Assembly: GCA_976226885.1 (NCBI GenBank)
Contig: OZ320321.1
Coordinates: forward strand, 55,862,001-55,926,000
Reading direction: 5' to 3'
DNA length: 64,000 nt
DNA from: Iphione sp. A-MEVVRFRX5
Taxonomy: Eukaryota
A program made the position numbers and the translations under genes. The notes below the pieces were generated by a model. That model made no database searches, had not been told where the DNA came from, and saw only the letters and a program-made list of their open reading frames with translations. Positions 1 to 61,260 of the stretch are shown here, one piece after another (positions within the stretch are counted from its first letter, which is position 1; each line of letters opens with the position of its first letter).

Positions 1-1528
1 AAACGTACAAAATAAGTTTAAAAACACATTATAAAATGTTACGGGTACAAATGTATATTAACATCTTATCTTGGCAAGGTTTGAAATTTATGCGTTTTGG
101 GAACGGTCTAAAATCAGCATGTTATGTCCTTCTGCAGGATGCATTAGTGCATACTGTACTCAAGGCTAATTATACATATCAAATGTTACACTCCATCGAT
201 TTCGCCATCTATCCAGTTTTAAGGACAGAAACAGAGTGGTGTTTCCACACACAGGGAATTCTTCATCAGAGGGCTGATGGAGATCGATCTTTAGGACCAA
301 ACAAGCTCGTAAAAAAGAAGAGATAATAACACCAGAGAGGCGGTGGGCTTTGGTCCGCCAAGCGGCCAGGCAAAGAGATGAAGACGGGGATGTCTAAAGA
401 TGATCAGAAGGGACGTCCGCGGCCAAAGCGAAAGGTCGGACCCATAGAAGCCATGTCGTTCTCTTCGGAATGGGACGAAGGGTTTATGGCGGATTAGATT
501 TCCACCTGACACAGGTAGCTGCACTTGCATGCTAACATGCAATCATGCAAACATTTCTAGACTGTGCCGCAGACACGCTGGAAACAGTCTGTAGAAAGCT
601 GTGATGACAATTTCAGGTAGGGACTTCAACCTGTAGGCGTATAATAACTTGTAATAGCATGCATGTTAGTACCTAGGCGACAGAAAACTTTGAAACATTG
701 AAGTAATATTCTGGTTTTTAGAGGGTGGAAAGTCAATTAGGAATTTTCGATTTTTGTCTTAAAAATGGCATTTAAAATTGCAAACCATTTGCGACCAGGA
801 CCGTTGGAGACCTTTCCCTAACGTCGACAAAATTCTGGGAGGAATTTCAAGAAAAAAAAAATTACGAGAAGTGAAATGTTAAATCTATTAGTCTGCGGAT
901 TTCTGTGGAGTCTACAGTTAATGAGGCAAGCCTTTTTTGCCCAGCCTTCGTTCCTACAAACTTCAGCGGAAATGAAGCTTTTTACGGTTGTCAAGACACC
1001 ATATGGTAAAGCTACCTGTTCCTCTGCCGATTCCCATTAGCCCTGCATTTTACCTGGTCGAGGCTAAAAGCCCGAAGGCCACACGGCTCATGCTGACCAC
1101 AGCGGGACCTGACCTACGTTTGCACTGGAGCCGTAGCTGCTGCTTGCCTCCGCGCGCTGCAGCCTGTGTCGTTGTCAGAAAGGTGAGCCTCGTATCGAGC
1201 CAACCTTGCTCGTTGGCCTTTATTTCCTTTGCAAAAGCGTGGATCGAATGCACATTAAAAAACCGCTGTTTCTGGCTAGCATTAAGGTTTTAAGCGTGGC
1301 GAAAGTGAAGTTCTAGCTGTATGGATATGGCTGGATTTGATATTCATAGTTGGAGATTTTCTAGGAGGCACACATCTAGAGTCTGTATTCTTGGATATAA
1401 ATATGAAAGGGTCATTTTTCACGGTCAACATGAGAGATATGGCTTCAAAAATCAATCTTAGCCGTCTGACATTTGCTATTTTCTACAGGCGGGTGCAGGA
1501 TTGTGGACAGTGATATAGTGGTAGTGAG

Positions 1529-1645
1529 GCAGGAGAGAGAGGGAGAGCGAGTGTGTGAGACATGGAGAAAGAGACAGAACAAGAAAAAGAAAAAGGGACA
1601 AAGAGGGAGAGAGAAAGAGAGAGAGAGAAAGAAGCAGAGAGAGAC
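1529..1645 (+). repeat. Purine-rich (GA/GAAA) low-complexity tract
   Basis: About 115 bp of near-continuous A/G containing (GA)n runs. Confidence 0.85.
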
Positions 1646-2718
1646 AAAAGGAATAACAACGATAGACGGCTTAGAATAGATCTTTTTCCTTAGATTCTGA
1701 AGCACATCTATTTACTGAATCATATTACAACACACGAAGCACTGCATATTTAAGTGGAAAGTGGACTATACAAACTCAGTTCACGGGAAAGACACTTCAC
1801 ACTAGAGGCAACTGAAGCCGAGAAGGGAAAGAGGCCGATAGATTTCCGGTATTGATACGACAATCTGATAGCCAATCAATACAAATGCACGTAACCGGAC
1901 CCGCCTGAGGTTGTACCCGGCCCAAGTGCTAAAGGCTGCTGACCCTACAGTGGCTCGACAATGCTCATAAGTAATAAACTCGGCCTAGGGATAAACATCA
2001 AACAACCGAACTACATGTACTACTCGCGTGGGTCGCGGGTTTAGCACGTAGGGCCACATCTACTCAGTCCCTGTTATATATATACATTATGGAAAAGAGT
2101 GCACACATATAGACAAGATTCCTTCTAAAATACACAGTCGGATGAACTAACTCGTATTGGCATTTAAACAAATGCTTTCCAACTCAACGGCATAAAAAAC
2201 TGTCCATCAATGAATATAATTCCGCTATTTTTTCCACTTTCAACTGTAACCGCATTAGCAGAGGCAGCCAATGTAGGATATCCTTAATAAAATATGCCAT
2301 ACATTCTCCATTAATTTAAGCTGTCTGAGAAAAAATTAAACACCAGGAAGTGCAATTCAGTGTTTATGACATCTGGAAGGAAACACTTGAAACAAATCAT
2401 TCGGTGCCAGATGGATAGACAGACATGTCAGATTTTCTTACGTTACAGATTAAAAAAAAAAAACAGTGGAAACATGGAATGTTCATCGGAGCCAATCTAG
2501 GTCATGATGCTGCTCGAGTGTAGAGCTCCCATATATCGGAGGGGAACGGGCAAATAGGTAAGTAGTCACTCACGAATCCCAAGATGTTCCTACCTGACAG
2601 GTGAATAATACGGGTCGATGGATATCGATCTAGTCAAGTAGGATTGGGTTGGCGCAGGTGGGATCAGTCGATGTGGTCTCATATTTTCTACCCGCTTTCA
2701 GCATGGCTCAACACTTAC

Positions 2719-2792
2719 TTCATCAGCAAACCACCACACGATATCGTCCCCTCAAGGACACCTATTTCTGTCAAGAACCCATGGAAACTCAC
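2719..2792 (-). other. Candidate recursive-splicing ratchet point with 74-nt cryptic RS-exon (RP1)
   Basis: The minus strand reads ...cattca ttttgttctttgtttgttctcttta CAG|GTGAGTTT (junction 2793/2792; 21 of 25 pyrimidines before the CAG). The 74-nt segment ends ...GATGAA|GTAAGT (donor hexamer 2718-2713). The 3' splice site is directly abutted by a consensus 5' splice site. Confidence 0.7.
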
Positions 2793-5236
2793 CTGTAAAG
2801 AGAACAAACAAAGAACAAAATGAATGTTGTGAGCAGATAGTTCGTTTCATGATAGACATGTGTACACACGTATAACCGTGTAATTGGTGTGTTTTATCAG
2901 ATGTTTCAAAAGAGCTCTAAGTATCCGCCTTGTTTCTAGCAGGGATACATTTTAGTCCTCTAAACAACATCCCGGTACATTGGAAGTTCATGCCGTTGAA
3001 AGTGTTTCTTTTTTAATATAGTTACAAACTTGTGCCGTCTACATGAAGGCAGCCACACTATAGAAAATGCTTCCGTTATAAACATACACTCTCAGACATC
3101 TTAATAATACATCACCTCCTATAAATACCATTAAAATGTTATAAGCCTGTAAAATATATTTCTTTAGATACATGATATACGTGCTCACTTTAATAAATAT
3201 CTTAAAATGTGTAAAATATGTGACAAAAAGTGTTAAAATGAACACTTGTTTCTGAGTGAAGTTGCAGGATGTCTTTATCCTTTTATGCACTTCGTGTATC
3301 TCCATTATACAGAATCAACTACATGTAGTTAATAAACAATGTAACTTTTTGCATCTAGAATGAAAAAGGTTCTAATCGGCGGTCTATAAATGACTCAGCA
3401 GTTTGCATCAGGAAACGGAGAAGGTGCAAAGGGCTTTATCTGGAGTCCCTCAAGGACATATCCCCTCCATCATTCGATTCACATATAACCAAATATCTGT
3501 GCACACTAGTCTGCAATTAAAACGCGCAAACATATAACCGTGTCAATATGGCGTCTGGTCTAAGAGCTTGTGTGGAAAGACAAAGGACAAGTATGGGAGA
3601 AACTCCCTTGTAGAAAGGCTTTCAGTGTGCATGATTAATTTAGTAAAAATATCCACACAAAATGCCAAATGCAATATACATGTACATAGAAGGTATGAAG
3701 TATTAATGTATGAAGCTGACGAGTTGGAATGTTACAAGATTCTCGAGCACTATTGGTCATGCAAAAAGACCTCTCACACCTGCGCATTGCTATGCAAATC
3801 GGTCTCATGGCCACAGCTATAAGGTCTTGCTGGATATCTACATGTAGTTTGTTCGGGTTTTAAAGGTACAGACATCAATGCAACCCACTAGTCTAAGAGA
3901 GGTTTTTAAAAGGCCGGGTCGATAGGTTTGCACCTGGCTTCCTTTCAGTCTATTCTTGTCCACAGTGGAGCCAGGCAACGACTGCATGTGAAATAAAGAT
4001 GTAAAACGACAAGGGCCTTGTATATACACGCTTTCAAATACACATGAATGTACATATGCATGATCATCGATGGGTGGAAAGGCGCCATCTCGGTTTAGCA
4101 GATAAGGCCACAGGTACTTTTTGTCATTATGCTTTGTTTATAAGCAGAGCATGCCTCTATTTGCCACCATTAATTTCTCTTTTAAAATATAAATTTTGGA
4201 GATGCAGGGTAGTTTTTGAAATTCAACCACACCTAAATACCTAGTGCTTGTCTTTGAACTATCTACTTCTCCGAATCAAATGAATCCAAGCACCAATAGG
4301 GCTAGATTATAAATAATTGCTCATTAGGAAGGCTTCCATGCCGGATAAACTTCAAATGCTATAGAAACAAAGCCCTAAGATCTCCCCCAGCCTGACAGTC
4401 TGGCTGTAAGTAGTATTTGAAAAGAGCAGCTTAGTGCTGGATGGGAACATGTCTCTTAAGAGCAGATTAGTTTTTATACAACGTCTCAGGGTAGACATGT
4501 TGATGTGCTCTTCCTCCTGGGAAATTTACCGATGCGAACACTGCAGATATCTTATAGGAATGAAGTATGGCCTTTATCTGTAGGCATTTTTAGTGTCCAT
4601 TTTCTTATGAGTGTCGGGTAATGTAAAAAGGAGCAAATCCTACACACTTTGTGATGTTCACAATCCTCGATAGGAAGGCCGCCGAGAATTGGATTAAGAC
4701 AAATGGCCCCGGGAGATGTTAATATATGAGCTTCCAGCATTCGGCGTGCGATCCCATTTTGGATGTAAAAATCATTATTCATAATATTACCGTCGACACA
4801 CGTTAGTTTTTTTTCCTGAGGAAGAAGAGAAAAAACACCTTGAATTAACTGCCGAACCATGTACACATCAAAACGAATCAGCGATTTCACTATGCTTTGG
4901 ACGAAATGGCAGTGAGAGTGCCATGGCACATATTTCAAGATAACTCCCCACAGGGACCATCCTTCCGAGATGCATACTTCCACTGAGCAGATGTACGATT
5001 AGGAAAAGAAAATGAAACAGGAATCAGTCGGAAAATCATAATGGATGGATTACAATATTTTCCCCATATACATACGTATGAGGCCAATGTTCCATCGTGA
5101 CGGATTACCCTTTCTAGGCCTCTGCTTTGTTGGGGGGGGGGGGCTGGGGATACCGGGCGACTCTCTTCTTCAGGAAACGTCTTACGTGTGTGGTGGTAGA
5201 AGATATGAAGTACGTCCTGCTTTCCTATACTCTGCC

Positions 5237-5326: not shown

Positions 5327-8300
5327 AAAAGCTTGTGTAGAATCTACAGCTAAGAGCTGTTGACAGCCAGGTGGCACTAAGATACTGTGTATAAAGGTTT
5401 GACCCTATGTCCCTTGATCCCCGCTACCCACAGGCTGCTTGCTATACATGGTGTGCATAAAGAAATTAGACAGGTATAACCTACAGGCATTGTAGCGTAC
5501 TCCGGCCCGGGGGAGCCATCTTCCATAAGTAGTAGTTGAGGACATGGCATACAGAAGGCCCAGTTACCTAGCAACAAGAGCAACATTTACCAGCGAGGGG
5601 CATTCAGATAGTGGGAAGCTAGGTTAGTGTAAGGGTTCAGGCTTTGCTCGATCTGTGTTAACCAGCAGGTGATTGGAATACCACCGGCATAAACGAGGAG
5701 GTTCAGGGTTGGGATCTGACCAGTGTACCAGGTCATGGGGAACTAAAACATTCACACTATATGTAATATGTTGTGCTTAATCTTACACAACAGAACACTC
5801 TTTGTACCGTTCGTGCAATACAGGCACGTCCGCCTGTTTATTAGGTTTTCAAAAGCACTATGCCCATGTAAGCTAGCCATGTAAGCCACAAATTGAATTC
5901 TATATAGGGAGAAACCATGTGCTGCACAGAAGAGTGCTCAGTAATATTTGTAGATGTTAATTGTGAAAATTGTATACCGCTGAACACAACAGAGTACAAA
6001 ATATTCGATTTGGCCAATGTAAACAAATAAGCCCATCAGAGAAGATGGTACCGACTAAATGTTAAACCACCCTTTGACAGCAGTCATCCCAGAAGGTGTT
6101 GAAATATAATCAATAGCGATTAGCTTTTATGCATACCATTTATGGGAGAGGAAGACTCGATCCCACTTGAAGTAAGGCGATGAAAATCAACAGCCTCGCC
6201 TTCCCCATAGACCAATGGTTTAGGATCCCGTGAGACCTAGAGTTGGAAATGTGGATGACCTTTTTGCATGCTCATATCAAAGCATCAGATTCTTGTGCTG
6301 CTATATTTGAAGTAGTAAGCAAAGATGCTCTCTTCCCCAAAGCCTTCAGAGAAGGAAACGAGGGACATTGCTCGAAGGACACTCACCACTAATGGCAATG
6401 AACGATGCATCGGAATAGCACAACATGTCAAGTGTGGGTTCAATTCGATTCAAAAGAATGTAGCTTTGATATTTTGTCATCATTGGACAATTTTTGAAGA
6501 TTGGAAATGGAGCTAACCCGACTACACTTATTGAAGTGTAGTTTAGGCGGTGATGGAATGGGATGAAGATTTTTACATCGCCAAAATTGAAAAAAAAACA
6601 AGAGCGTTGCGAAACTTCATATCACCGGGCCAAATATCCTTGTCATCATGACAATCCGCAGGTGCAAATGCATGGTGCTTCCAGGCATGTAGCTGGCTTT
6701 GTCGTGTAAAGTACGCAGGTCTGCCAAGAAATACCTCGGTACTCTTTTGGTCACTTTCGAAAGGGTAGAAAATTACTTGTGGAATGGCTTCAGCATTGAC
6801 AATGTCATCTACATATCTTACCACCAAGATGGGGGGCTCCTTTGTTCCATCTGATGCAGAACCTCACCGCCCACAGGCCGATATCTCTTGATATTAAACC
6901 ACACTCAATGGATGAAAGAGTCACTATGATAAGCAACACACAGAGCATCCTGTGCAGAACAAAGACTGTTCATTAAAGAATCTTGAGCAGTAAAAATATA
7001 TGCACGTTGTAGGCAAGACCAAAACAGATCAGAAGCAACCATCACATACCTTGAGACCCAGAACCCCAAAGGCATTCGTACTGTGTAAATATACGTACGT
7101 TAACATGATAATGGATCCGCTTTTCGTCACGAACTGCCAGTCTTGGTTCTCTACGATCGCTGGTGCACCTGCCAGATGCCGTGGTAGAATATTGTTCTGC
7201 CGTTCAGATGGCCCTCGGAGGCGTAACAAAAGAAGCCTTTGTGATGGGATTCATAACTTGGACATGCGCAATCCTCTAGGGCAAAATACTATTCATAACA
7301 AAACTTTCCCTTATTGTTGCTCGTCTAGCTTTACCAAAGTCCGTTCTAGACTGATCACCGTGATCTATAAGCCTTGATCGTGATGGGCTATGCCCATAAG
7401 TGCCAGACGTGGGGTGAATATAAGCACGCGCTGAACCCTTGGGTACGGGGCCACTATTAGCTTCACATAGGGGCTCCCAATAGCAGTTGCTCATTCTTAT
7501 CTCTGCCCAGATACTCTATTCATGGCAGACCAACAATTTGAATCAGGGAAATTGCCATTTGTCTTCAATTTAGGTCCAATTCAATTCTCGGTTCATGAAA
7601 TTGTCAATATGCATTATGCAATATGCATTAATTATACATTTATCTGTACACAACCGAAAAAGACGTCTGATACTAAATTCAGACCCAGTTGACATCAAAA
7701 TTCAAAAGATATTGTGTTAAAGATCAGTAGTAACTGTAAGGTATTAGGTAAACAAGGAATGCATACTGAAAAACAGTAGAGGGAACCTTAAAGGTTAAAT
7801 ACTTCAGGCTCCTTGTGAAATTCCAAAAGGAATCACAAATGTCGGACCACGATCCAGTGAGCATGTTTAAGCGTTTGCCTCAGTGTTTTTTTCAATGCAA
7901 ATCGTGGTCGTTATATTTTCTCAGCGCGCATGATAAGGATGGATGTCCAAATAATTCTGACCTCCTCTGACCTCTTAATTAAGGTATAATCTGCATAGAC
8001 ATACTTGATTTATACTGCCATTCTGACAGCACCCGGCATGACTCATGTGCAGCTATGGCAACCCGATAACAAGAATCCGGGCCCTGCGGCTGCATTTGAG
8101 GGGGTTTCAAATTGACCAGTTCCATGCACCCTGCACTTCATGCAGGTTGCACTACACTGGTAGATTTAACACTGTGTATGGAATAGAGGGGGTCTCATAT
8201 AAGCCCCTGCTTCCAGTCTTAGGGTTAATATCTTTACCATTGGAACTCTGAACTGAACGTTGCCTGGGGTCACAACCGATTATTCCCTTCTTGTGTCAGC

Positions 8301-32813: not shown

Positions 32814-34655
32814 ACTTAGGTGCCTGTGACAGGTCATCTGGTAGGTAGTCTATCTCAAGGTGGGGACAGGGTAGAGAATCTGCCCAACCACTTCGGACCT
32901 TCTCATCATTGGTTCCTCTTCTCCCGGGTCGTGTCCGGAAAGTGAACGGCACTGTCTATGATGAAACAACCGCTCAGACACTACTCTTAAAATTCGATTC
33001 ACCGCCAAAGGAAATTTGGTAGGAATACATATGTTATAAATATTCCGGATTGCTTCTATTCAGAATAAGCATAGATTATGCACGATTGGGACATTCATTT
33101 ATTGTGCTGCCAAAACTGACCAAGTATTACCTACTTTGTCAGGCGATAATAAAATGGATACAATATCTATAAAGTAAAGTTTACTCACCATAGAGACGAA
33201 CATATTACATAGGAAAATTTAAAGTGCTTCTATAGGATCTTCAGGGAGTAGGATAAGTAACCATTGGAATGGGTTCTATACAATTCATGTCAGAGGCAAC
33301 TCACACTTTCCCTATCGATTACCTCACGCCTTTAAACGCCTATAACTTCTGAAGTTCAAGGAAATCTTGTTGGGCCTTTTTCCATATAAACATTATTGGT
33401 TTAAAGCATCACACAATAGCAATGATTAGAACAGCGCTGTGCTGCTTTGAAGGCTGGCGTAATACAAATCAGCTCCAGAGCTGGATGGCAATGGCACTGA
33501 GTTGATTTTGGTGCGAGCTGGCAATGGTGAGGTTTGGTCATGGCGCGAATCATCGTACAGCATATTCTCGAATGAATGGGAAAAAAGACTAAACATAACC
33601 TGTCTCTGGGGAGTTGGTCCCTTCCCCAGATACCTTCCAGAGCGACCTCGCAATGCCTAAATAAGGCTACTTGACCAGGGACCCCTCCCTTACTTGGTCT
33701 ATTGATTGTTCTAATACATATGTCATCTACGCTGGAGATTAAGACTAATCCACAGCCCATGGGCAATGATCCTGGCCAGCTTGTCCCTGCAGTCGCTCTC
33801 CTCATCAGTCTGCCTTGCGTCAGCCTCGAGCTACATCTGTGCCAAAACACCAGCGACTTAATGCGCCCGGTCGATACCGTGGAATTACCCTAATAAGAAA
33901 AGCTTACAGTGAGGCTTCCTTTAATTACCTCCAATGCTGTCTGGGAAAATAAAGGCCCATAGAAATAGGGATTCTAGGCCAGCAGGGGTGATGCCAAGTC
34001 CGAAAGCCAACCCAGCGGAGACGGTCAATCCGCGGGACTGGCCCGGCAGGCGAGCTCCACATTTTCTTCAATGCCCGCACCACAGTCAGTGTTCAATTAA
34101 CCCACACACTACACCTTCTTTCTCTCATAACGACATTATAAAGCCAGGATCTGCGCCGCCATAGGAGGCCTTACGCCGAGTTTGCTGGGCGTGGCAATGA
34201 AGGCAAACTAAAACAATCAGCCACCAAAGCTTGCCCGGCCCGCCGCGGCTAATTCGAGGAATTCCTCAAAGAGCGCGTCGACGTCATTGCCCAAATCGGT
34301 TTGACATGGGCTGGATGTAAGAAAAGATGTGATCAAGGATGGATGGGAGGAAAGTAAAGTGAGTCCGCGTGCCGCCTCCCGGAACGTTATTAAGGAGACT
34401 GAAAGGGTCCTCGAATCCAGAACTAATGCCACACAAATGGGCAAGAGCTGCAGCATGATTCACTCGGTAAGATTATCAACAATCGGGTGGGTGAAATGGG
34501 TCTGAAGGAGGGATGTTCCCATTCTTCACCTGCACTGAAGCACCAGGTCTCCCTTCAATATCCCTCTGTGTGTGGCACTGTGGATATTAGATCAGTGAAG
34601 AAAAGAAGGTGGGAAGTTCACATCAAAGAAGGATTGGAAAAAAAGGCCAACTTAC

Positions 34656-34701
34656 TCAAGTCATGTCTCTCGCCATTAGGGCATCTCGTCTGCAAACTTA
34701 C
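34656..34701 (-). other. Candidate recursive-splicing ratchet point with 46-nt cryptic RS-exon (RP2)
   Basis: The minus strand reads ...gtattc attcccatgttttattcttctcattg CAG|GTAAGTTT (junction 34702/34701; 20 of 26 pyrimidines). The 46-nt segment ends ...ACTTGA|GTAAGT (donor hexamer 34655-34650). Confidence 0.7.
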
Positions 34702-36558
34702 CTGCAATGAGAAGAATAAAACATGGGAATGAATACGGTTATTTCCTGAAGTGTAATTGAGTAATGACAGGAACAAACACAGCTTCTTTTAACGCCTAAT
34801 GCATTGCTGTCAAGGAAAATAATGGAAGAGGCCGACGGAAAGAAATTTTAAATTTCCAAAATATCTACCGCTTTCTGTCTTTCTGAAGTGAGAATAGGAG
34901 CGAATTACTAGTCGGCGTCTAATTGTTAAAAATTCAATTAGCTCTTGGCCGTGGGTGAAAGCTGGGTTGTGATCCCATATTTTCGGATGTCATTACGCCT
35001 GCTCATTGGCTGCCCTTCGAAACGGGCTCATTAGCGGCACGAAAAGCCGCTTACAGAGAAGAGAGCGGAGTACTTCGCACGGCCTTGTCGCCGACACCTA
35101 GGTCGCGAATGACTAAATACTTTTTGGACAAGGTCACAGCAAGTAACAGAATTGAGTAGAGCGAGAGCTACGAGCACACTGTGTAATATTAGCACATCTG
35201 TATGACGACTGCATTTACATACGTATGTTCCTACATTGTAGAGACATAGAAGATTGCTAAGACGGCGAATAGTGTACTGTATTTATTCCTGAATATAAAA
35301 TCCCTATACAACAGCATGGTAAGATGATATAGAATATTATTTGATACAAATGATCCATAGTTATCAATCTCCTATAGGAATTCTATATGTTCTTAGTTAA
35401 TTATGAATATTTTCAGCCATAGGTATTGCTATCGAACCACCTATGAAATTACATGACAAATTAGCTGACCCGCGTAGTAATTAAAGACTTGAAAGGTTAC
35501 CACCTGCTCTGCGCGATGCGCATATATTCATTCATAATTACAGGCGTTATGACGAATTAAGTCAGGAATTTGCAAAATGTATTCCCGGATAATACATGCT
35601 GTAAGGCTTTGGACTGATCTTCTGTAAATGACGCCAACCCTGGTATATCTGAAGGCTTTAAGGCTGTGGTCCCATAAATCCTAAGTGGGAAATGCATCAT
35701 AATCCCTAGGTTAGGGCTTGGTCCGTCATACACAATCAATTCCCAGTCTGGCTTTAACACCGTTCATCCCCCCCCCCACCCTTCCCCCACTGGAAGGGGT
35801 GTCACGGTAAAAGATGGAGACTATCTTTCGTAGCGGATCCCACACGGGCTTCTCCTCGGAAAGCAGGGGAGAAGCCACCCGTCTGGGACTCGACAAGAAG
35901 AGGTCTTGTCAATCTCTTAAGGTAATTGCACATGTGTGAATCTGCGAGGGCTTTTCTGGCTTCACTGATGGGTGAGCAGGAGCTACGAGGCACACGAGTA
36001 GGCACGGAAGGTGGGATGAGCACAGGTCTACAGAGAAGCAGCCATTAGACAATAAGGGGACTTTCCTGGTGCGACGTCTAGAAGGACTAATTGGTATTAA
36101 GGCATGTCAATAGAAGACCAAATGAAGGCTGCATGAGAACGCTTCCCTCGCCAAATCGTGGATAAGGCGTTTCGCTGGGTTACAACGCGAAAACACTTGG
36201 CCAAATATCTGCTCTTGTCAGTGTGTTAATGTTCAAATTACGTTTTTAGAGGTAATTTAGATAGATGCTCACTTTAAAATGTAATTTCGTCAGGAGTACC
36301 CTATCTGGTGCATTACGTCCACAGCTATGCAATTTTCTAATCGTTATTAATAGCAGATAATATACTCAGGATTCAAACTTAACTTTCTTAAATGTTTAGT
36401 ATCTGGGTCAATCACCTCCGAGTAGATATGGCCCTTTTTTGAAGATTCATCACCAGAATTTTATCATTACCACTTCATAGCTCTTCATGGCTTCCTTCGC
36501 CGGCATAGTCATTTTTCAGTTAGCTTTTGCTGCTTGCTGCTTCCATCATGGCAACTCT

Positions 36559-44279: not shown

Positions 44280-45440
44280 AACACTTGCTTCCGACGTGAG
44301 GCAGGGGGCGCCCTCGGCAGGCCCACTCACCTTGACAATCATTTAAATCGATCCACGGGCTCAGGTAATAAGCCTCTTATGCTGCACCGGTGACGCTGTC
44401 TCCAACGGAAATTATAATCAAGCGGAAGACCTCCGCCCCCACCCCAAAGTGCAAATTGCACGGAGAAAGGGGCAGGGATTGCAGGCACGGTGGAGCTGGG
44501 GTGTGAGCTCGGAAGAGGTAGAGGAGAAGGAGCCCCACGTTGCCCAACGGTATACACGGACGGGGAAACATATTTATTCGTCTAACACTGCCCGAGATGC
44601 TTGTCGAGACAACAGAGGCTATAGTCTGCCGTGAAGGCGATGGAGCCAGGGCGGGGAGCATAACCCAAGACCTTCGTATAGTGGCCGAACGTATCTTAAC
44701 TCAGCGACGAAAACGGCACTGATATCAAGCACAACGCTCCTCCCAGATCCAAAATTCCGCCGCCATTTCCTAAATCAGTGTTGCCCCCGTTGTTGTGGAG
44801 GTGTTGTTCCGGCGCTGAATGGCTTGTTGATGCCCCCCAGTGCCTCCCGCGCGGTCGTCGATTTGTGAATTCAAGTCGCGCCGCTTGGTGGCCTTTTGAA
44901 TACATTAGTGGTCGAGGGATCGAGGCCTCCCGACATTGCATTATGAGCGTAAACAAAAGACAGCTATCGATCGCACCTCCAGGGGTCGGGAGGGGGGAGG
45001 GGGTGGGTGGGGGGCCACGTGTAGGGGAGGGTGTTTTGGGCGTTGGTGCCGAGATCTGTAGGTATAATTGGGGGGGGGGGAGGGTGAACTGGGCGAGAGT
45101 AACATATTCCAGAACAATGGTGGCCGTGATGGCCAGAAGCAGGTAATGCATGGTCATGTTGACACCGGCGGCTTCCCTCATACATGGCCACGCATTGAAT
45201 GGCGGATCACTCTGTTAAAAAAACACGACGACACTTAGCCCTACCATCCAACACGATCCCCCTTGCATACGGCGCCGCCGCCGCCGCCGCCGCGCGTCTG
45301 TCGCTTAAGGGGTGCTAGCTCTTCTCAAGGGACCGGAGTGTCTCCCTTTGGGCAAACAGACAACTGAGAAAAAAAGGGGAAAGGTGCCGAACAGTATAAA
45401 GGATTGTGAGGGGGTGAGGAAAGTGTCGCCGGGTGACGCG
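44280..45440. promoter_or_regulatory. GC/CpG-rich island with (GCC)n, G-runs and minus-strand splice signals
   Basis: Visibly GC-rich block with (GCC)6-7 at about 45272-45292 and G-run clusters at 44982-45014. It has a minus-strand donor AAG|GTGAGT at 44331/44330 and an acceptor (tttcccctttttttctcag) at 45364/45363. Confidence 0.4.
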
Positions 45441-47797: not shown

Positions 47798-47836
47798 TCC
47801 TCTCTCTCTTTTGTGCTCTCTCTCTCTCTCTCTTTA

Positions 47837-47887
<51 letters not shown>

Positions 47888-47895
47888 CCCTCTCT
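47798..47895 (+). repeat. Interrupted (CT)n microsatellite
   Basis: Long (TC)n runs with short interruptions, inside a ~150-bp pyrimidine tract. Confidence 0.9.
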
Positions 47896-50778
47896 TTGTA
47901 TCTTTTTCTCAGTGTCCTTCTTTATGTTTAGATTGCTAGTGTGATTTGGTGAAGGCGTGATTTAATGATGATGCTATTTGTTAATGGTACGATCTTAAGG
48001 TGGGATCGCCTGGTGAAATCTTTATTTTTTTGGGTTATAGTGTGATTTGAACTTGTGGCTGGCATCCTCCATACATTCTTTGTGCCTAAGCTTTGTAATG
48101 ATGCTTCGGTGTATTTATGCATGCAACCAGTGCCTGAACCCAATTGGGCACGAGAAACAGGGCTTTACGACCCAGAAAGTGCACTCTCGCATGCGTTTGA
48201 CTGCCATTATCCGTGCACTACTAATACATCAGGACAGGCTTTATGCATGCATAACCTTCGCATATTCGTTTCATGTCTGTCAAAGAATTTGGTATCACAA
48301 ATTACTACTACGGAAGGGCATAGAATAGATTTGAACGTTTCTTGCAAATATATGTACATGTAAATATAGAGGACACCATAAAATTGACACGGTGCCAACT
48401 GCTGTAACGAATAGGAATATTTACTCAACCAGTATGCAAACTGTACAACTGCAAATCAGAAAAGGGTTCATGAGGTTGCCTCCCTCATTCTTCTCTGTGC
48501 TATTTAAGGGAGGATTTCCATGCATGGGTGCCTCCATGTCCATGCATGCATGTTTGCGAATGTATATTTTGGGAACTATAACTAACAGGAGGAGTGTTTC
48601 CATGTATATGTGTCTGTGCATGTCCGTAACATGTATGCATGCTCTGTGTTTTAAAAATGAGAAATGTTCAATTTTCCACACTTCAAGGTGCGTGTTTGGT
48701 GCCTGTATTTTGGGAAAAATCATTATTACAGGTGTATAAGCTTAAAAACATGGTGAATTACACAACATGGTGTGTATACAGTGGTTAACAGATCAAGAGA
48801 AACACGCCCCAATATGCTCACACAGACACACATGCTGACATGCGTACATGGACACTCAGCCTAACAGACTAGCCTTAGTCAAATCCTAACACCCTATATA
48901 GCAGCTCTACCTCATATCAAAGGTTACTAGTGGTCAATTGATGAGCAAACTAGGTTATTTGCCGAAGACTAGCTGGCTTGTCTCTTTGGATACTCTTGGG
49001 GACTGGACGTTTCCATATGTAAGATATTTCTCTCTCCATGCATGTGCCGAAATTTGAAATAATTAATTGTTCACTGGAAACAACATGCTGTTAGTCATGA
49101 AATATAGATAGGCACAAACCCACGTAGAAGCAGCAAGAGAACATCTGCTGTCTTGGTCTGTGTTGAAAACCATGTTTATCATTTATGAGTATAACTATTA
49201 AAGCGTCCGAATACTTGTAATATTCAATAAACTAGGTCGACTTTAAAAATTGTGAGAGCAGAGTTTTCGAAGCTTATGTTCAGCAGCTTGTAATCTTACA
49301 AAACGAGTGACCAGGGTTATGATTGATGATACAGATTATAGTATAGTAAAATAAAATATCGGTATATTCCTTGAAGTAAGGTAATTATTTATTTGGATAT
49401 GTAGTTGAAAAATAATATGCTAACTGTAATACATGTAAATACATACAGCGAAACACATATGCCGAGAAGAGACAGACCTTCACAATCCAAACAGAAACTC
49501 AGAAATACTATTGTGACACCTCAGAGGGGGCAATATGCGAACATTAATGAATAAGGGGGCGATAATACGGCATGATTGCGATGTGCTGATGAAAGCCGCG
49601 AGTAAATGGTCTCCACTGTCATGGTGGCTAGCGCGAGTGAATAGATAATTACAAATGAGGAAGGCAACTACACTAGTTACAACAAAAGGAAGCCCATAGG
49701 AAATGCTCGGCCTCTGCGGGCAAATAGTTAACGTTTCGCTGAATGAATATATCTTCCTGTAATCATTGCGAAAACCGATTTTTTTTTGTCGAACCACTAG
49801 GAACAGTTACATGGAGTGTACCATATACACATGGCTATTGTTATGAAGGTAAACACGTTAGTAAATATTTAACTGCATCCCAATATGAAATGTCATTATC
49901 TCTTAATGACTGAATTCTTAGTGATTTTGAACTGTTCGATAAAATCTATTATTCGAAGATGAGACGTCACCTAAGGTAGAATGGTCGACGAATATTATTG
50001 ATCCCTGAGCATTCTGCCCTCTGTTTAAGCTTCTCTTTCTAATGCCGTTGCAGATGGACCCTTTTCCATTGTGTGCAACAGCTTCCGTGGGTGAACAGCG
50101 GTCAGTGGGTTGACCAGTCACATGGTCAGGGGTGGGCAAGAATTTAGTATGGAGTAGGTGACAGAAGGGGTAGAACACTGCCTTCAGCCACCTCGGCGTG
50201 TTTACATGGCTAACTGTGCGCCGGTGATGGAGCCGCGCAGGCACCAACCCCGGCCATGACTGACACCCAACAGGGCCAAGTAAGCATTGGGGGGGGGGGG
50301 GGGGGGGGCGCCAGAAGAGCGGGATTGGCGGGCGAGGGCGTTGGAGGTGGAGGCAGCAGGCAGTGCATTATCACCGCCACACTAAAGAGGTTCGACCCTC
50401 CACAGGCAGCGCAGGAGATCAATCTCCAATGGCTTATTTAGTGCCTACCATAGCGGGACACTCCGCCGGCAGAGATATTACAAAGCCGGGAGAGTCAGGG
50501 AGGGCACAAGGTAGGTCTCCAGAAGGTCGACGAGACAAGGCTCGGCCAGGGGTCCTCTCTACAGAGCCTGCGTACGGCTTCCTTCCAACCACAAGGGGCA
50601 CTACCTGAAGTATGGCTGTTTTGTGGCAACCCCCGCCACCCCCAGCCCCTCTTTCCAAGCGATCCTCCCCGAGCCCATGTGCTATTCATACTACCCGACG
50701 ACCTGTCGACAATAGATGAGGGCCCTTAAGGCCGACCCCATTGAGAGTTGTTCGGCAAAGTCGAGCCATAGTGTATCC

Positions 50779-50848
<70 letters not shown>

Positions 50849-50900
50849 GTGAGTGAGTGAGTGAGAGAGACAGAGATAGAGGGGGGGGGGGAGAGAGAGA
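50779..50900 (+). repeat. Compound microsatellite (GT)11(GA)22(GAGT)~5 followed by a G run
   Basis: Read directly from 50779-50900. Confidence 0.9.

Positions 50901-55604: not shown

Positions 55605-55664
<60 letters not shown>
55605..55664 (+). repeat. (TC)30 microsatellite with one interruption
   Basis: 60 bp of TC repeats with a single TA. Confidence 0.92.
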
Positions 55665-56009: not shown

Positions 56010-58679
56010 ACTCCGTTGGGGGAGGTTGCGCCAACCTCTTCCTCTTTCTCCCCCTTTATTCCCTCATGTGTGCATGTCTATCGCCAACCCTGTAGTCAAA
56101 CCATGTCCGCAGAACACCGGTCCATCCAACCGCGCATTTGGCATGAGCCACCATCTCCCACCAGTGTGCCACGGAGGGACGGGGGGGGGGGGGGTTGGCC
56201 ATACGGCGGTCAGCAGTCGAACCAGACGTCCAGTTGGCTGGGTTCCCCCTAAGAGATCGACTCATACCAAATCATTAAGCATGGCCCTCAAACGGCGGAC
56301 GTCACCACGACCAATGCGGTAACCATGAGTACTATCGCCATCGTCGTTGCCTTTGAATACACCATTACTATAATGACAACCGGTAGAGGTACATGTTATG
56401 CACGTTACTGGATGAATGTCTCATGCAACAAATATTAATGACTACAAGAGCTCTCTGAATATTTTACATGATTTGAAGTAAATTGGCCTATTACCCACTA
56501 AAGGTCACCAGGTCGTCAAGCCATTACTGTCTACGATGTTTCCCGTTTCTCTAGGAAGACATATCCTTCTACAAGCAATATAATATCATGACGTTTTTGA
56601 CGTGTGCGATGGTTCTACCGTTTTTACACGAAAAAGACACTTTTATCATCATTGAGACTCAATTCCGTTCATGGTTAGGAGCTATTTTTAGAATGAAACC
56701 CCTATGTAAGGTACTTCATATGCGAGCCACGGAGCTTCCCCGAGTGTTTGGTTCTCGTATGGAGGGTGCTGGACATACCGTGTATATACGGAAAGGGGGA
56801 GGCCAGTGGATGTGTGGGACAGCAGCGAGAGGATGTAATGCATATCAAATAGTCCACAGCAAAAGTGCCTACCATCATGCGAGCATAAAGCTACGCAGCT
56901 GAGGCGACGCTTCAAACGATAGAACACCTCCCTAGGGGTATCAGCAATCAAAAAGAGGATTTCTCCCCCACTCCGCGCCTGTAGGTGGATTGATCAATTT
57001 GCGTACGTTACAGTCCGTCATTTTGCCGCCTCGATTTTATCGAGGCAAACTGAGCATTTGAAATCTGAATCGCGGTTCATTTGTCGAAGTCGCCTCACGG
57101 ATGTGTCGTAGGGAGCCGGGAGAACTGATACGCCTCGTTCTATAGACAACAAATGGTGGGGGGGGGGGGGCTCCCTAACTGCAGCATACCTCATGTTTCT
57201 ATTTAAAATGGATAGTCGTGCCACCGCCCGACGGAGGCAGATCTATTAGTGGAAGCTACAGAAATGTAATCAGCATCACATTGCTGACCGGCCTGGGTGT
57301 CTCGCAGGCTCTTGCTGGCCCGCTCAGGCTTTAAATCCGCGTTAAGGCGATTGGCTGTTCACGTAATGTCAGCCAGAGAAATGACTAACGAGCACTGGAA
57401 CGGTCGGATAAACAAGGACACTTTTGTACGTAAGACAAAGCCAATATACCGAAGGCCAATAATCGCTAAAAACACAGCGGAGAAATTAAAGACATCATCC
57501 GCAGCTTTCGCTCTCTTCAAAGAGTGAGAAATAAGCGGTTACTTTCCTGCTGCTGCTTTCCAATGCCTTCGCATGGAGCTGTAGAGATGTCAGTCGATTG
57601 AACTATTGTTGATGTGCGTGTAATGATAATGCGATCAGTCTACGAGGAATGGCGACACTTTAGGTGTGAGAAAAGAAACCTAAAGCGATGCCAAACGTCT
57701 CCCAATCGCCTCCACTAAGTGGCTGAAATTGCTTCGCACAAATCAGACGGCGGAGGAGGTTCGGTGGAGAGTGGTGATGGATCTCCTCCTTTCACACCGA
57801 CGCCATTTAACTCGATAATCATTCACTGAGATTGATGGTCGTCGTATCGAATTATATCACAATACGTCTGCTAGCATTTTTTCGCCACTCGCGGTTACAT
57901 CCTAGTTAAATCTATTGTTAAACCATGTACATAAATAACGCTAATACGAGAGAACGCGATACAGCCCCACCGTGGCAAAGAAAGAATCATAATTTCGAGT
58001 AATACAAATGATCGCGAAAATGGAGGAATAGTACATTGTAGGGCCGTAACCTATACTCGAATCAGTGCGACTTGAAAATAAACGCAAATTAGGTTCGAGC
58101 AATTAGCTCGACCTTTAGACTGTCACTTGTCCTTCAGCGAGCTGTCATGCGCAGTGGATCGATAGCCCAGCCACTCTGCTGCATCGTACATATATAATCG
58201 AAGACGAAGTATACACAAGAGTCATACAAGTATTTACTCAGTCCCACACAGGAAACAAAAGATTTGTACGTATTTGCATGATGGTTTACGAGTGAGGTTG
58301 AACATGCTATTCTTATGATATTTTTACCTGTATTTCTCCCATTGCCTCTACTGCAACTAACACAGCACTTTGAGTCACTCAGTATTATTTACGTTATTAC
58401 AGGAACTCATTTTTGGGTGGGTTACTTATCTATTTGGGAAAAGCTACATACTGAGACGACCATACTGAGAAACATAAAAATCCAGTCAGATACTACACAT
58501 GTGCATTTTCACCGAAGGAAAAACTCCTAACATAACACTTATCGTTGGCAAAGGAGATTAAAGTACGGAATACCCGGTTAGTCCTTTTTTTCTCTGTTTG
58601 AGTGCAATATTCAAAGACGGCGTGAAGATAATTTACAGACTTGTGTAGGGGGGGACCTAGGTGACTGATCTTACCGTGT

Positions 58680-61260
58680 TTATTCGCGTAATCCATGCCT
58701 CCTGCGCCGCCCATGCTGTACGCTGTCAACCACAGCGGCATGAGGACAAACGCGTGCAGGCCATGGTATGTCATGGCTCCAAGCTGCATGGCTGGCCGAA
58801 CCTCTGGGACGAAGGAACAACTCGCTCTCTTGTCGCCGTCTCTGACGTCGTCGTCGTCGTCGTCGTCGTCGCTGTCGCCGCCGCCGCCGCCGCCCTCGCT
58901 GTTGACGCTGACGGTCGCTTCTCAGTCCACCAGGCGGGGCATTCTCCTCTCCGCCAAGGGTAGGCTACCCGCCGAGAGAAGCGGAGGGTCATCTAAGCTA
59001 CAGTTGTCATGTCATTTAAGACATCGACTCCAGTTTCACGTCCTCTATTGCCTTTCTATTCAGCAGTAGCTTGACAGACATCTACACTTGGCGTTTCGAT
59101 GTAGACATCTCCATCTAAATCCCCAAACAGCTCCGACAACTCTGCAACGCGCCCGTGCACCTTCTCTCTTCTCGCCACTGGTGCCTACTGTGGAAAAATG
59201 GTTTTTCTTGGCAGGATTCACCTCCGCGGGGGTCTCTCCCTACCACAGGGGTAGTGCAAATAACACTCAGAGATGCAACCGGCTCTCTTACTGCCGCTGC
59301 TGCTTTTACTGACTGACGATGTAGATAATTCCTGCACCGAAAGCTCTCATCAGAGGGAACGAGTACAATGAGATGGAGGAGGAGGAGTGGGCGGCCGACA
59401 GGTGAGGAAAATCTCGATGGCCACCTACAAAGTAATGATAATGGTGATAAGCACTTACGAGAGTCTCAGAGAAGCCTTAGTCCTGAGATACCTTATCACC
59501 GCCACTGCCGTTACCACTGTCGTTCCAGTGAGTCGAGTCCACCTCTTGCCTGCTGCCACGGCTACTCCTGAGCAGCTACCTCTGACAGGCGGCCGTGGAC
59601 ATTAATGATTCTCGGGAGAGTGAGGAGCTCTCCAGGGTCGGAGGGGTGATGTGGTCGGGCGTCGGGAGGCACTGCCGCTGCTGTCGCCGCCGCCGCCGCC
59701 ACCGCTGCCGCCACTGTCTGTGTCTCCCGCCTCCGCTAGCACCAGCACCACCGACGCCGTCACCGCCACTGCCACCACCGCTGAGGCTGGGAAGCCACCC
59801 GCCGCCAGCGCCAACGACAATGACGCCGACGAGAAGAGCGGACACTTGCCTCTTCAGTTCGCCTCTTCCGGATCGGGCCTCAGCCTGATACAGAGAGTGG
59901 CCAACGCCAAGTTCCTGCCCATTGGTGTGTACATTGGTTGGTCCTTGGCACAAACTGGGACAGGCGCCCAGGCTACTCGGTTAGCACATCTGGTTCAGTA
60001 GAGAACAAAACCTCGGGAGAGGAGGAGCCCGTCGACTTTTCAAGCTGACAAAACGTCTGAGTAGTCGCGTCCTCCCATCTAAGCTGCTACTGCGCCAGTG
60101 TCTCTGCTTGTCTCCTCCACTCCCTTTCAGGCGCACTCTGTCTCACATCGAACAGCCGGAGGAGGAGGAGGAGGAGCAGCCCTCGTCCCTGATGCTGCAC
60201 CTCTCTCCCCAATGTATCTGCTGCTGGCGCCGCTGTAGTCGCTGCTGCCGCTTGCTGCCGCTAAAGGCGCGGACACTCGATGTCTCAGAAAGTCCACCGG
60301 TCCGGCAGCTAACCTTGCAATTGTCGGGCTAATTTGCTGTCGATCAGAATCAAGTTAGTGATCTGGCCTTGTCGTGGGCTGACCGGGCGGAGGAGGCGGA
60401 GGTGGAGCTGTAGGAGGAGGTGGATGTTTCTTGAAGTAGTGGGTGGAGTTGGCTGTGTAGGAGTAGAGGAGGGAGGAGACTTAATAGGGAGGAGGCCTGT
60501 GGGTGGCTGAGATGGTGATGGTGGTGGTGGTGGGGGATCTAGCACCGACTGACGTTTTCAGTGATAAGATCCGAGAGGTGGTTTTGGGCACGAGCACGTC
60601 GCAGTTCTTTGGCCGGTCAAACTCGATCGTCTTCTGCAGAACCGAATCTGGATGTGTGTCCTGTTGGCCTTGAAGTCTAGTTGAAATGTCCGCTCGTTTA
60701 ACTTGGCTGCTCGGCAATGGCCAGGGCCCATCCCTCGTCGTCGCACAGCATTCGTCCCCGTCGAGCTAGTCTAGTAGCACTGGCCACCGAAGAACTAGTA
60801 GTAACGAACTTGGCCGTTTAGCGGCGGTAGTCGTGCTTGCCATGCACCACTCCCATTTACTGACTGAGTGCTACGGTCGATGAGCGCCGGCTGCACCACG
60901 TCTCTCTGACCGGAGCCACTGACTGCGGCGTTTGCCTCATGGACGCCTGCTGGTCTTGGGACACATTGCGGCACTCATAGACATAACTATACTGGCAGCA
61001 CACACCTCTCCAGCGGCTTGATGTGCTATTTCGTCCACAGAACAGGCAGTGCCTGCCATCAGAGGTACAACGAGGGCTGGGAGTTCGCAAAAAAAAGGTG
61101 GCAGGAGGAGGAGAAGGAGGAGGAGGAGGTAGGGGGCAGCAATACAGCAGTTGTGGCGGGAGGTCTAGTTAAAATCTACCACAAGCGGGCGCCTGTAGCA
61201 AACATTTATGACCTGGGTATCAGCAGTGCGAGTCCGTGCACGTAGAGCAGCTAGAAATAG
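58680..61260. promoter_or_regulatory. ~2.6-kb GC-rich island saturated with trinucleotide repeats (candidate CpG island / UTR / low-complexity exon cluster)
   Basis: Contains (CGT)n, (GCC)n, (GGA)n, (GCT)n and (GGT)n runs. All six frames are broken into low-complexity ORFs of about 125 aa or less. Confidence 0.35.
58846..58894 (+). repeat. Compound trinucleotide repeat (CGT)8...(GCC)6
   Basis: cgtcgtcgtcgtcgtcgtcgtcgtcgctgtcgccgccgccgccgccgccc. Confidence 0.9.

What the first reader, a model, noticed from the sequence alone, without database searches (positions are those of the whole stretch)
2713..2833. RP1: CAG|GTGAGT ratchet point with 74-nt frameshifting RS-exon
The minus strand has two branch-like motifs, CTCAC (A at 2830) and ATTCAT (A at 2821). 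These are followed by a 21/25 pyrimidine tract, CAG|GTGAGTTT at 2793/2792, and a 74-nt segment ending GAA|GTAAGT. Two of its three frames contain stops and the length is 3n+2, so inclusion in a coding mRNA would frameshift it and likely trigger NMD (inference).
Basis: partly seen in the sequence, partly recalled or inferred. Interest (0 to 1): 0.72.

Follow-up and report, generated by a model that had tools for sequence, protein, structure and literature searches.

The report
Probable recursive splice site in giant intron
A spot on the minus strand joins a near-perfect intron end directly to a near-perfect intron start, with a 74-base decoy exon behind it. A twin 32 kb upstream has the same layout, so a very long intron is probably removed in steps as in flies, but no RNA data could be obtained to show it.

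Summary
On the minus strand there are CTCAC (A at 2830), TTCAT (A at 2821), 21 pyrimidines in the 25 nt before the AG, and CAG|GTGAGT at 2793/2792. A 74-nt unit (3n+2, stops in two of three frames) ends GAA|GTAAGT.

It is far more than chance. This site and a second one at 34702/34701 are the two best donors of the minus strand and also its 2nd and 4th best acceptors. Their combined scores are 27.3 and 26.4 bits. The next best site on either strand scores 16.9, and the largest value in 300 shuffles was 24.7.

The two sites are not repeat copies. They share only signal features:
- TTCAT with its A 28 nt before the AG
- TT at -6/-5 and C at -3
- an AG-free zone
- a weaker GTAAGT 74 or 46 nt downstream

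This is the anatomy of fly-type ratchet points with cryptic RS-exons.

Not shown: use in RNA (no RNA run was listed), conservation (no relatives were reachable) and the host gene. The 20 ORFs tested (nearly all of the longest) have no Pfam domain. A candidate signal-peptide exon at 58789-58675 is unverified, so the frameshift/NMD claim stays an inference.

The scan has noted similar candidate sites elsewhere in this genome. This is a new member of a known kind.

The parts
2829..2833 (-). Distal branch-point-like motif CTCAC (yUnAy). Its A at 2830 lies 37 nt before the G of the acceptor AG.
2820..2824 (-). Proximal branch-point-like motif TTCAT (yUnAy). Its A at 2821 lies 28 nt before the G of the AG, the same motif and spacing as at the second site (A at 34730).
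2795..2819 (-). Polypyrimidine tract: 21 of 25 pyrimidines, 17 of them T. TT at -6/-5 and C at -3. No AG in the 60 nt upstream of the acceptor.
2787..2795 (-). Ratchet-point core CAG|GTGAGT. The acceptor AG is 2794-2793 and the regenerated donor GT is 2792-2791. Acceptor 14.6 bits and donor 12.7 bits, the best combined site in the window.
2719..2792 (-). 74-nt cryptic RS-exon candidate (3n+2). Frame 0 is open and frames 1 and 2 have stops. It has an in-frame TGA if entered in phase 1 from the candidate upstream exon.
2713..2718 (-). Donor of the cryptic exon, GAA|GTAAGT. At 7.9 bits it is weaker than the ratchet-point donor, which scores 12.7 in place and 10.3 if the upstream exon ends ACG.
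34650..34734 (-). Second module of the same build (RP2). It has TTCAT (A at 34730), a 20/25 pyrimidine tract, CAG|GTAAGT at 34702/34701, a 46-nt unit at 34701-34656, and the donor TGA|GTAAGT at 34655-34650 (5.0 bits).
58675..58789 (-). Unverified candidate for the upstream coding exon. An ATG at 58789 opens a 38-codon signal-peptide-like reading (MQLGAMTYHGLHAFVLMPLWLTAYS|MGG...). The donor is ACG|GTAAGA (8.6 bits) and the intron phase is 1.
   Evidence: no relative found

Best explanation
RP1 is a recursive splice site (ratchet point) inside a very long intron of a gene transcribed from the minus strand.

Inferred mechanism, following the fly and vertebrate model:
1. The spliceosome recognises the 74-nt unit 2792-2719 as an exon. 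Its strong acceptor (branch A at 2821 or 2830, the tract, CAG) and the downstream GTAAGT at 2718 define it.
2. The upstream exon is joined to base 2792.
3. That join rebuilds a strong donor (xxG|GTGAGT) at the junction.
4. The rebuilt donor outcompetes the weaker donor at 2718, so the 74-nt unit leaves with the rest of the intron and no trace stays in the mRNA.

RP2 at 34702/34701 would be the preceding step of the same intron. With the candidate exon ending at 58675, the intron would be removed as about 24 kb, then 31.9 kb, then the remainder that runs past the window start.

If the cryptic exon were kept, its 3n+2 length would shift the frame of a coding message.

What is shown: the sequence architecture and its statistical excess. 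What is inferred: use in RNA, the order of the steps, the host gene and the NMD consequence.
For: The motifs are exactly as described.

Strength and rarity:
- RP1 and RP2 are the 1st and 2nd best donors and the 2nd and 4th best acceptors of the minus strand.
- Combined scores are 27.3 and 26.4 bits, against 16.9 for the next site on either strand and a largest value of 24.7 in 300 shuffles.
- 2 observed against about 0.015 expected GTRAGT after strong acceptors on the minus strand; 0 on the plus strand.

The two sites are not copies of a repeat. Only the 44-nt signal core is alike, at 73% identity.

Shared hallmarks of validated fly ratchet points:
- TT at -6/-5, found in 196 of 197 fly ratchet points against 44% of ordinary introns (10.1101/006163).
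- A prominent pyrimidine tract, C at -3 and an AG-free zone.
- A short downstream unit ending in a donor weaker than the ratchet donor. PMC8605326 describes cryptic RS-exons of about 50 nt, generally out of frame.

Context:
- About 58 kb without a recognisable coding exon. The 20 ORFs tested have no Pfam domain, and no exon-like unit scores above 17.4 bits apart from the two built on the RP sites themselves (RP1's 74-nt unit and a 105-nt unit ending at RP2's donor).
- The 31.9-kb spacing lies within the 2.6-63.6 kb range of fly recursive segments (10.1101/006163).
- Weak strand signs agree with minus-strand transcription: GTRAGT 26 against 14, AWTAAA 62 against 76, and T over A.
Against: - No RNA evidence of any kind: no RNA run was listed for this stretch, so no junction reads, sawtooth or lariats.
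- No orthologous sequence could be fetched, so conservation of the core is untested.
- The host gene and flanking exons are not identified. The candidate upstream exon has no match among 1.84 billion representative proteins.
- The position-weight matrices were written from general metazoan consensus, not trained on this genome.
- A single site of this strength is expected by chance about once per few hundred windows, so RP1 alone would not be conclusive. The case rests on the pair.
Confidence: 0.65

Rival explanations
1. The 74-nt unit is an ordinary expressed exon: constitutive, 5'-UTR, or a regulated poison cassette of a minus-strand gene. It merely happens to begin with GTGAGT, and the donor at its 5' end is not used.
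For: It is the best exon-like unit on the minus strand: acceptor 14.6 plus donor 7.9 bits, with frame 0 open. In mammals most exons with a 5' donor motif are expressed rather than cryptic (PMC8605326, introduction).
Against: An exon starts with GTRAGT by chance about 5 times in 10,000 (frequencies). Here two units in one window do so, each with the best donor score of the strand. One open frame in 24 codons is expected about one time in three. The unit's own donor is weaker than the one at its 5' end, which in tested cases favours skipping (PMC8605326).
Confidence: 0.17
2. The site is a dual-use AG|GT site or an alternative splice site. It serves as an acceptor in some isoforms and as a donor in others (for example the donor of an exon that ends at CAG), with no stepwise removal of one intron.
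For: At RP2 an acceptor at 34806 (9.8 bits) plus the RP2 donor would frame a 105-nt unit with one frame open. The fused motif alone does not say in which order the two halves are used.
Against: At RP1 no comparable upstream acceptor frames an exon ending at 2793. The last 25 nt before each AG are a pyrimidine tract with branch-like motifs, which is intron-like and not exon-like. The paired architecture with downstream weaker donors fits the recursive model better.
Confidence: 0.08
3. It is a chance juxtaposition of splice-like motifs in untranscribed or non-spliced DNA.
For: No expression, conservation or host gene could be shown. The scan reads many windows, and a single site of this score is expected by chance in roughly 1 of 400 windows (extrapolated).
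Against: Two such sites lie on the same strand of one window, both beyond every one of 300 shuffles. Both have a downstream GTAAGT within 80 nt, and both have TT at -6/-5 and TTCAT at -28. The joint expectation is about 1e-6 per window before counting those extra features.
Confidence: 0.07

Closest known systems
Drosophila intronic ratchet points with cryptic RS-exons (Ubx, kuz, Bx, luna; Hatton 1998, Burnette 2005, Duff 2015, Joseph 2018/2021)
   Same: - A fused (Y)nNCAG|GTRAGT site with a prominent pyrimidine tract and TT at -6/-5.
- A setting in tens of kb without exons.
- Several sites per intron, tens of kb apart.
- A short, out-of-frame downstream unit ending in a donor weaker than the ratchet donor (10.1101/006163; PMC8605326).
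   Different: The animal is not an insect; other notes of this scan call it annelid-type or lancelet, and I did not check this. No junction, sawtooth or lariat evidence and no conservation data exist here. The cryptic unit is 74 nt against about 50 nt typical in flies.
Vertebrate RS-exons in long neuronal genes (Sibley et al. 2015, as cited in PMC8605326)
   Same: An exon-definition step uses a downstream donor. The reconstituted donor then competes with the RS-exon donor. Inclusion of the RS-exon would give a premature stop.
   Different: Vertebrate genomes show little strand-specific enrichment of such sites (ratio 0.9-1.5 in PMC2773006), and most of their RS-exons are expressed. Here the density, 2 sites in about 56 kb, is fly-like.
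Computationally predicted RP-sites in large introns of non-fly invertebrates (Shepard et al. 2009, PMC2773006)
   Same: Fused donor-acceptor sites are enriched on the sense strand of introns over 50 kb in sea urchin (8.2-fold), mosquito, bee and beetle. This shows the motif class exists beyond Drosophila.
   Different: That study gave genome-wide counts only, with no spiralian or lancelet genome and no RS-exon analysis. The present case is a single locus with the full module.

Membership tests
Recursive splice site (fly-type intronic ratchet point) | Juxtaposed 3' and 5' splice-site consensus (Y)nNCAG|GTRAGT | tested here: met
   CAG|GTGAGT at 2793/2792 scores 14.6 bits as acceptor and 12.7 as donor, the best combined site in the window.
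Recursive splice site (fly-type intronic ratchet point) | Exceptionally strong pyrimidine tract with TT at -5/-6 (196 of 197 fly sites; 10.1101/006163) | tested here: met
   21/25 pyrimidines and TT at -6/-5, with no AG in the 60 nt upstream. RP2 has the same features.
Recursive splice site (fly-type intronic ratchet point) | Lies on the sense strand of a long intron (tens of kb) of an expressed gene | tested here: inconclusive
   About 58 kb has no recognisable coding exon, and the strand signs for minus transcription are weak. The candidate upstream exon at 58789-58675 is unverified. The host gene was not identified.
Recursive splice site (fly-type intronic ratchet point) | Short downstream cryptic RS-exon ending in a donor weaker than the ratchet donor | tested here: met
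   The 74-nt unit ends GAA|GTAAGT at 7.9 bits, against 12.7 (or 10.3 rebuilt) for the ratchet donor.
Recursive splice site (fly-type intronic ratchet point) | Splice junctions from the upstream exon to the site, a sawtooth in total RNA, and lariats | not testable with these tools
Recursive splice site (fly-type intronic ratchet point) | Core conserved in related species while the cryptic exon body drifts | not testable with these tools
   No relatives were reached. An exact-pattern scan of metagenome contigs found 0 matches, and an ORF near the site found no homologue. No eukaryotic genome collection is on hand.
Poison (NMD) cassette exon | Included in a fraction of mRNAs, where it introduces a premature stop in the host reading frame | tested here: inconclusive
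   The length is 3n+2 with stops in 2 of 3 frames, and there is an in-frame TGA if entered in phase 1. The host frame and any inclusion are unknown.

The most novel reading that the evidence does not exclude
Fly-type 'zero-nucleotide' recursive splicing with cryptic poison RS-exons operates in a non-insect, non-vertebrate marine invertebrate. Other notes of this scan call it annelid-type. Here it would cut an intron of more than 56 kb into steps of about 24 kb, 32 kb and a remainder. That intron may be the first intron of the neighbouring acetylcholine-gated channel gene, which lies 14-28 kb beyond the window start. This would argue that the mechanism, RS-exon included, dates back to the bilaterian ancestor.
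Probability: 0.5. Interest if true: 0.55.

Novelty: new member of a known kind. Interest (0 to 1): 0.45.

Why it matters
Recursive splicing has been demonstrated experimentally only in flies and vertebrates, and the two differ in how the sites are used. A clear, statistically secure pair of fly-style modules in a distant invertebrate would give a concrete, testable locus for two questions: whether stepwise removal of giant introns is ancestral to bilaterians, and whether the cryptic-exon safeguard came with it.

For genome annotation, such sites also flag the strand and extent of very long introns where no exon is visible.

Tried and rejected
- **RNA evidence.** The look-up of sequencing runs (kind rna) on 1500-4500 listed none. 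Its cap is one, so read laying could not be used.
- **Repeat or transposon origin of the two modules.** Rejected. The pairwise alignment, the repeat finder and a local blastn show only a 44-nt, 73% similarity at the signal core.
- **Known RNA families and tRNAs.** None found.
- **Host gene.**
  - 20 ORFs (nearly all of the longest) have no Pfam domain; the only matches are weak and far below cut-off.
  - Two ATG ORFs are not on record as called genes.
  - The candidate signal-peptide exon (38 aa) found nothing among 1.84 billion representatives. That library holds one protein per 50% cluster, so this does not disprove the exon.
- **Relatives.** An exact 25-mer across the core found nothing in metagenome contigs. 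The 143-aa ORF 1.8 kb away found no homologue.
- **CpG profile.** Computed to locate a promoter or gene-body methylation; it is flat at 0.56-1.02 and uninformative.
- **Literature.** No paper in the library links recursive splicing with annelids or amphioxus in substance.

Full report
**Observation**

Reading the minus strand confirms each item of the finding.
- CTCAC lies at 2833-2829 with its A at 2830.
- ATTCAT lies at 2825-2820 with its A at 2821.
- The 25 nt before the acceptor AG (2819-2795) hold 21 pyrimidines, 17 of them T.
- The AG is 2794-2793 and is followed directly by GTGAGT at 2792-2787.
- 74 nt later the unit ends GAA (2721-2719) and is followed by GTAAGT at 2718-2713.
- The 74 nt are open in frame 0 and carry stops in frames 1 and 2; 74 = 3n+2.

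The window has no N runs, GC of 45% and CpG o/e of 0.80. No ORF exceeds 205 aa, and there are no Rfam families or tRNAs. It is non-coding DNA of an invertebrate-like eukaryote.

**Is it more than chance?**

The bare 9-mer YAGGTRAGT is not remarkable: 4 matches against 1.4 expected, and 6 of 100 shuffles reach 4. The composite site is remarkable.
- Of the five AGGTRAGT sites in the window, only the two on the minus strand at 2793 and 34702 sit behind a pyrimidine tract: 21/25 and 20/25, against 7, 11 and 13/25 for the others.
- The minus strand has 24 YAG sites with at least 20/25 pyrimidines. At the observed frequency of GTRAGT after AG (5-8 per 10,000), about 0.015 should be followed by it; two are. 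The plus strand has 15 such sites and none.
- I scored every AG and GT with position-weight matrices written from the general metazoan consensus. The matrices are my own approximation, not trained on this genome.
  - The two sites are the 1st and 2nd best donors and the 2nd and 4th best acceptors of the minus strand.
  - Their combined scores are 27.3 and 26.4 bits, and the next best AG|GT on either strand scores 16.9.
- In 300 dinucleotide shuffles done in 500-nt blocks, to keep local composition, the window-wide maximum averaged 19.2 (sd 1.7) and never passed 24.7.
- Extrapolating that tail, one such site is expected in roughly one window in 400. Two on one strand are expected in about one window in a million.
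- Each site also has a GTAAGT within 80 nt downstream. The chance of that is about 0.045 per site from the strand's GTRAGT density.

**Not a repeat**

The two modules do not align outside the signal core. The repeat finder reports only microsatellite families. A sensitive local blastn of 1 kb around each site finds only the 44-nt core of the other, at 73% identity with E = 0.65. The likeness is therefore convergence on a signal, not common descent.

**Anatomy shared by the two sites**
- A TTCAT (yUnAy) motif with its A exactly 28 nt before the G of the AG.
- TT at -6/-5 and C at -3.
- No AG for at least 44 nt upstream.
- GTRAGTTT after the junction.

In Drosophila, TT at -5/-6 occurs in 196 of 197 validated ratchet points against 44% of ordinary introns, and the tract is more prominent than usual (10.1101/006163).

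The downstream donors (GAA|GTAAGT at 7.9 bits; TGA|GTAAGT at 5.0 bits) are weaker than the ratchet donors. Those score 12.7 and 12.5 in place, or 10.3 and 10.2 if the upstream exon ends ACG. In flies this relation leads to skipping of the cryptic RS-exon. [quoted passage not shown] The 31.9-kb spacing lies within the 2.6-63.6 kb range of fly recursive segments (10.1101/006163).

**Context and host gene**

- None of the 20 ORFs tested (nearly all of the longest) has a Pfam domain.
- A search for exon-like units (acceptor at least 7 bits, donor at least 6 bits, one open frame) gives only 19 on the minus strand.
  - The best is RP1's 74-nt unit at 22.5 bits.
  - The second is a 105-nt unit that ends at RP2's donor.
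  - All others score 17.4 or less.
- From about 58.6 kb down to base 1 there is thus no convincing exon, as expected of a giant intron or of intergenic DNA.
- The GC-rich zone at 58.4-61.2 kb holds a possible first coding exon on the minus strand.
  - An ATG at 58789 in a fair Kozak context opens 38 codons, MQLGAMTYHGLHAFVLMPLWLTAYS|MGGAGGMDYANKH, with a hydrophobic core and A-x-S before a possible cleavage point.
  - The donor is ACG|GTAAGA at 58675/58674 and the intron phase is 1, the phase typical after signal peptides.
  - Entered in that phase, both cryptic units run into stops: GEFPWVLDRNRCP* and GKFADEMP*.
- This exon is an inference. It found nothing among 1.84 billion representative proteins. 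That neither confirms nor excludes it, because signal peptides diverge quickly and the library holds one protein per 50% cluster.
- Earlier notes place an acetylcholine-gated channel gene 14-28 kb before the window start. Its strand is not given, so it is only a candidate host.
- Weak strand signs agree with minus-strand transcription of 1-58600: GTRAGT 26 against 14, AWTAAA 62 against 76, and T over A by 2%.
- The CpG profile is flat and uninformative.

**What could not be done**

- No RNA run was listed for the stretch (the cap is one), so no junction, sawtooth or lariat evidence exists here.
- No related genome could be reached. The collections on hand hold no eukaryotic genomes.
  - An exact 25-mer scan of metagenome contigs found nothing.
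  - A nearby 143-aa ORF has no homologue.
  - Two ORFs are not on record as genes.
- The identity of the animal is also unchecked. Other notes of this scan call the genome annelid-type or lancelet.

**Interpretation**

Only splicing signals are known to produce such a fused, strand-specific, doubly optimal site, and the pair excludes chance for practical purposes.

The reading that fits all features is a fly-type ratchet point:
1. The 74-nt unit is defined as an exon.
2. The upstream exon is joined to 2792.
3. The rebuilt GTGAGT donor beats the weaker donor at 2718.
4. The unit leaves with the downstream intron segment.

I put this at about 0.65. The rivals are:
- an expressed exon that merely begins with GTGAGT (0.17);
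- a dual-use or alternative splice site without stepwise removal (0.08);
- chance (0.07).

It applies only if the intron interrupts a coding sequence, which is plausible but unproven.

**Comparison with what is known**

Recursive splicing is established in Drosophila and vertebrates (PMC8605326; 10.1101/006163; PMC6110456). A strand-specific excess of such sites in large introns was computed for sea urchin, mosquito, bee and beetle (PMC2773006). I found no paper in the library that treats it in annelids or amphioxus.

The scan has noted several other candidate sites in this same genome, on other pieces. These are unchecked leads, but they suggest the feature is genome-wide. This is therefore a new member of a known kind: a good, testable locus rather than a new mechanism.

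Noticed in passing
window 34650-34734 (-): A second ratchet-like module (CAG|GTAAGT at 34702/34701) with a 46-nt unit and a downstream TGA|GTAAGT. It has the same build as RP1 and is central to the statistical case. An acceptor at 34806 could also frame a 105-nt unit that ends at this donor.
   Followed up: yes
window 58400-61200: A GC-rich zone (52%) with GTC/GCC triplet repeats. On the plus strand, a strong donor at 59402 (11.7 bits) and the best plus-strand acceptor at 60131 (13.9 bits) would frame a 729-nt intron. This suggests a plus-strand transcript running head-to-head with the candidate minus-strand exon at 58789-58675.
   Followed up: partly
window 4815 (-): The strongest acceptor-like site of the whole window (17.3 bits, ...ttttttctcttcttcctcag|G) lies inside the 143-aa ORF 4552-4983. 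It has no matching donor, no Pfam domain and no homologue.
   Followed up: partly
window 6576-6863 (-): A 96-aa open stretch contains VVRYVDDIV, which recalls the YxDD box of reverse transcriptases. There was no Pfam match at E up to 1, so it may be a decayed retroelement fragment.
   Followed up: partly
window 44696-45181 (-): A 161-aa ATG ORF with a hydrophobic N-terminal stretch and a proline-rich middle. It has no Pfam domain and is not on record as a gene. It could be an alternative upstream exon candidate (exon-like unit 45211-44977) or a chance ORF.
   Followed up: partly
window 47800-47902, 50801-50900, 55605-55664: Long (CT)n and (GA)n microsatellites. The 47.8-kb and 50.8-kb arrays form imperfect inverted arms about 2.9 kb apart.
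   Followed up: no
window 2555-2563 (+) and 18000-18008 (+): The plus-strand motifs TAG|GTAAGT and CAG|GTAAGT have no pyrimidine tract (7/25 and 11/25). They served as internal controls for chance AG|GTRAGT sites.
   Followed up: yes
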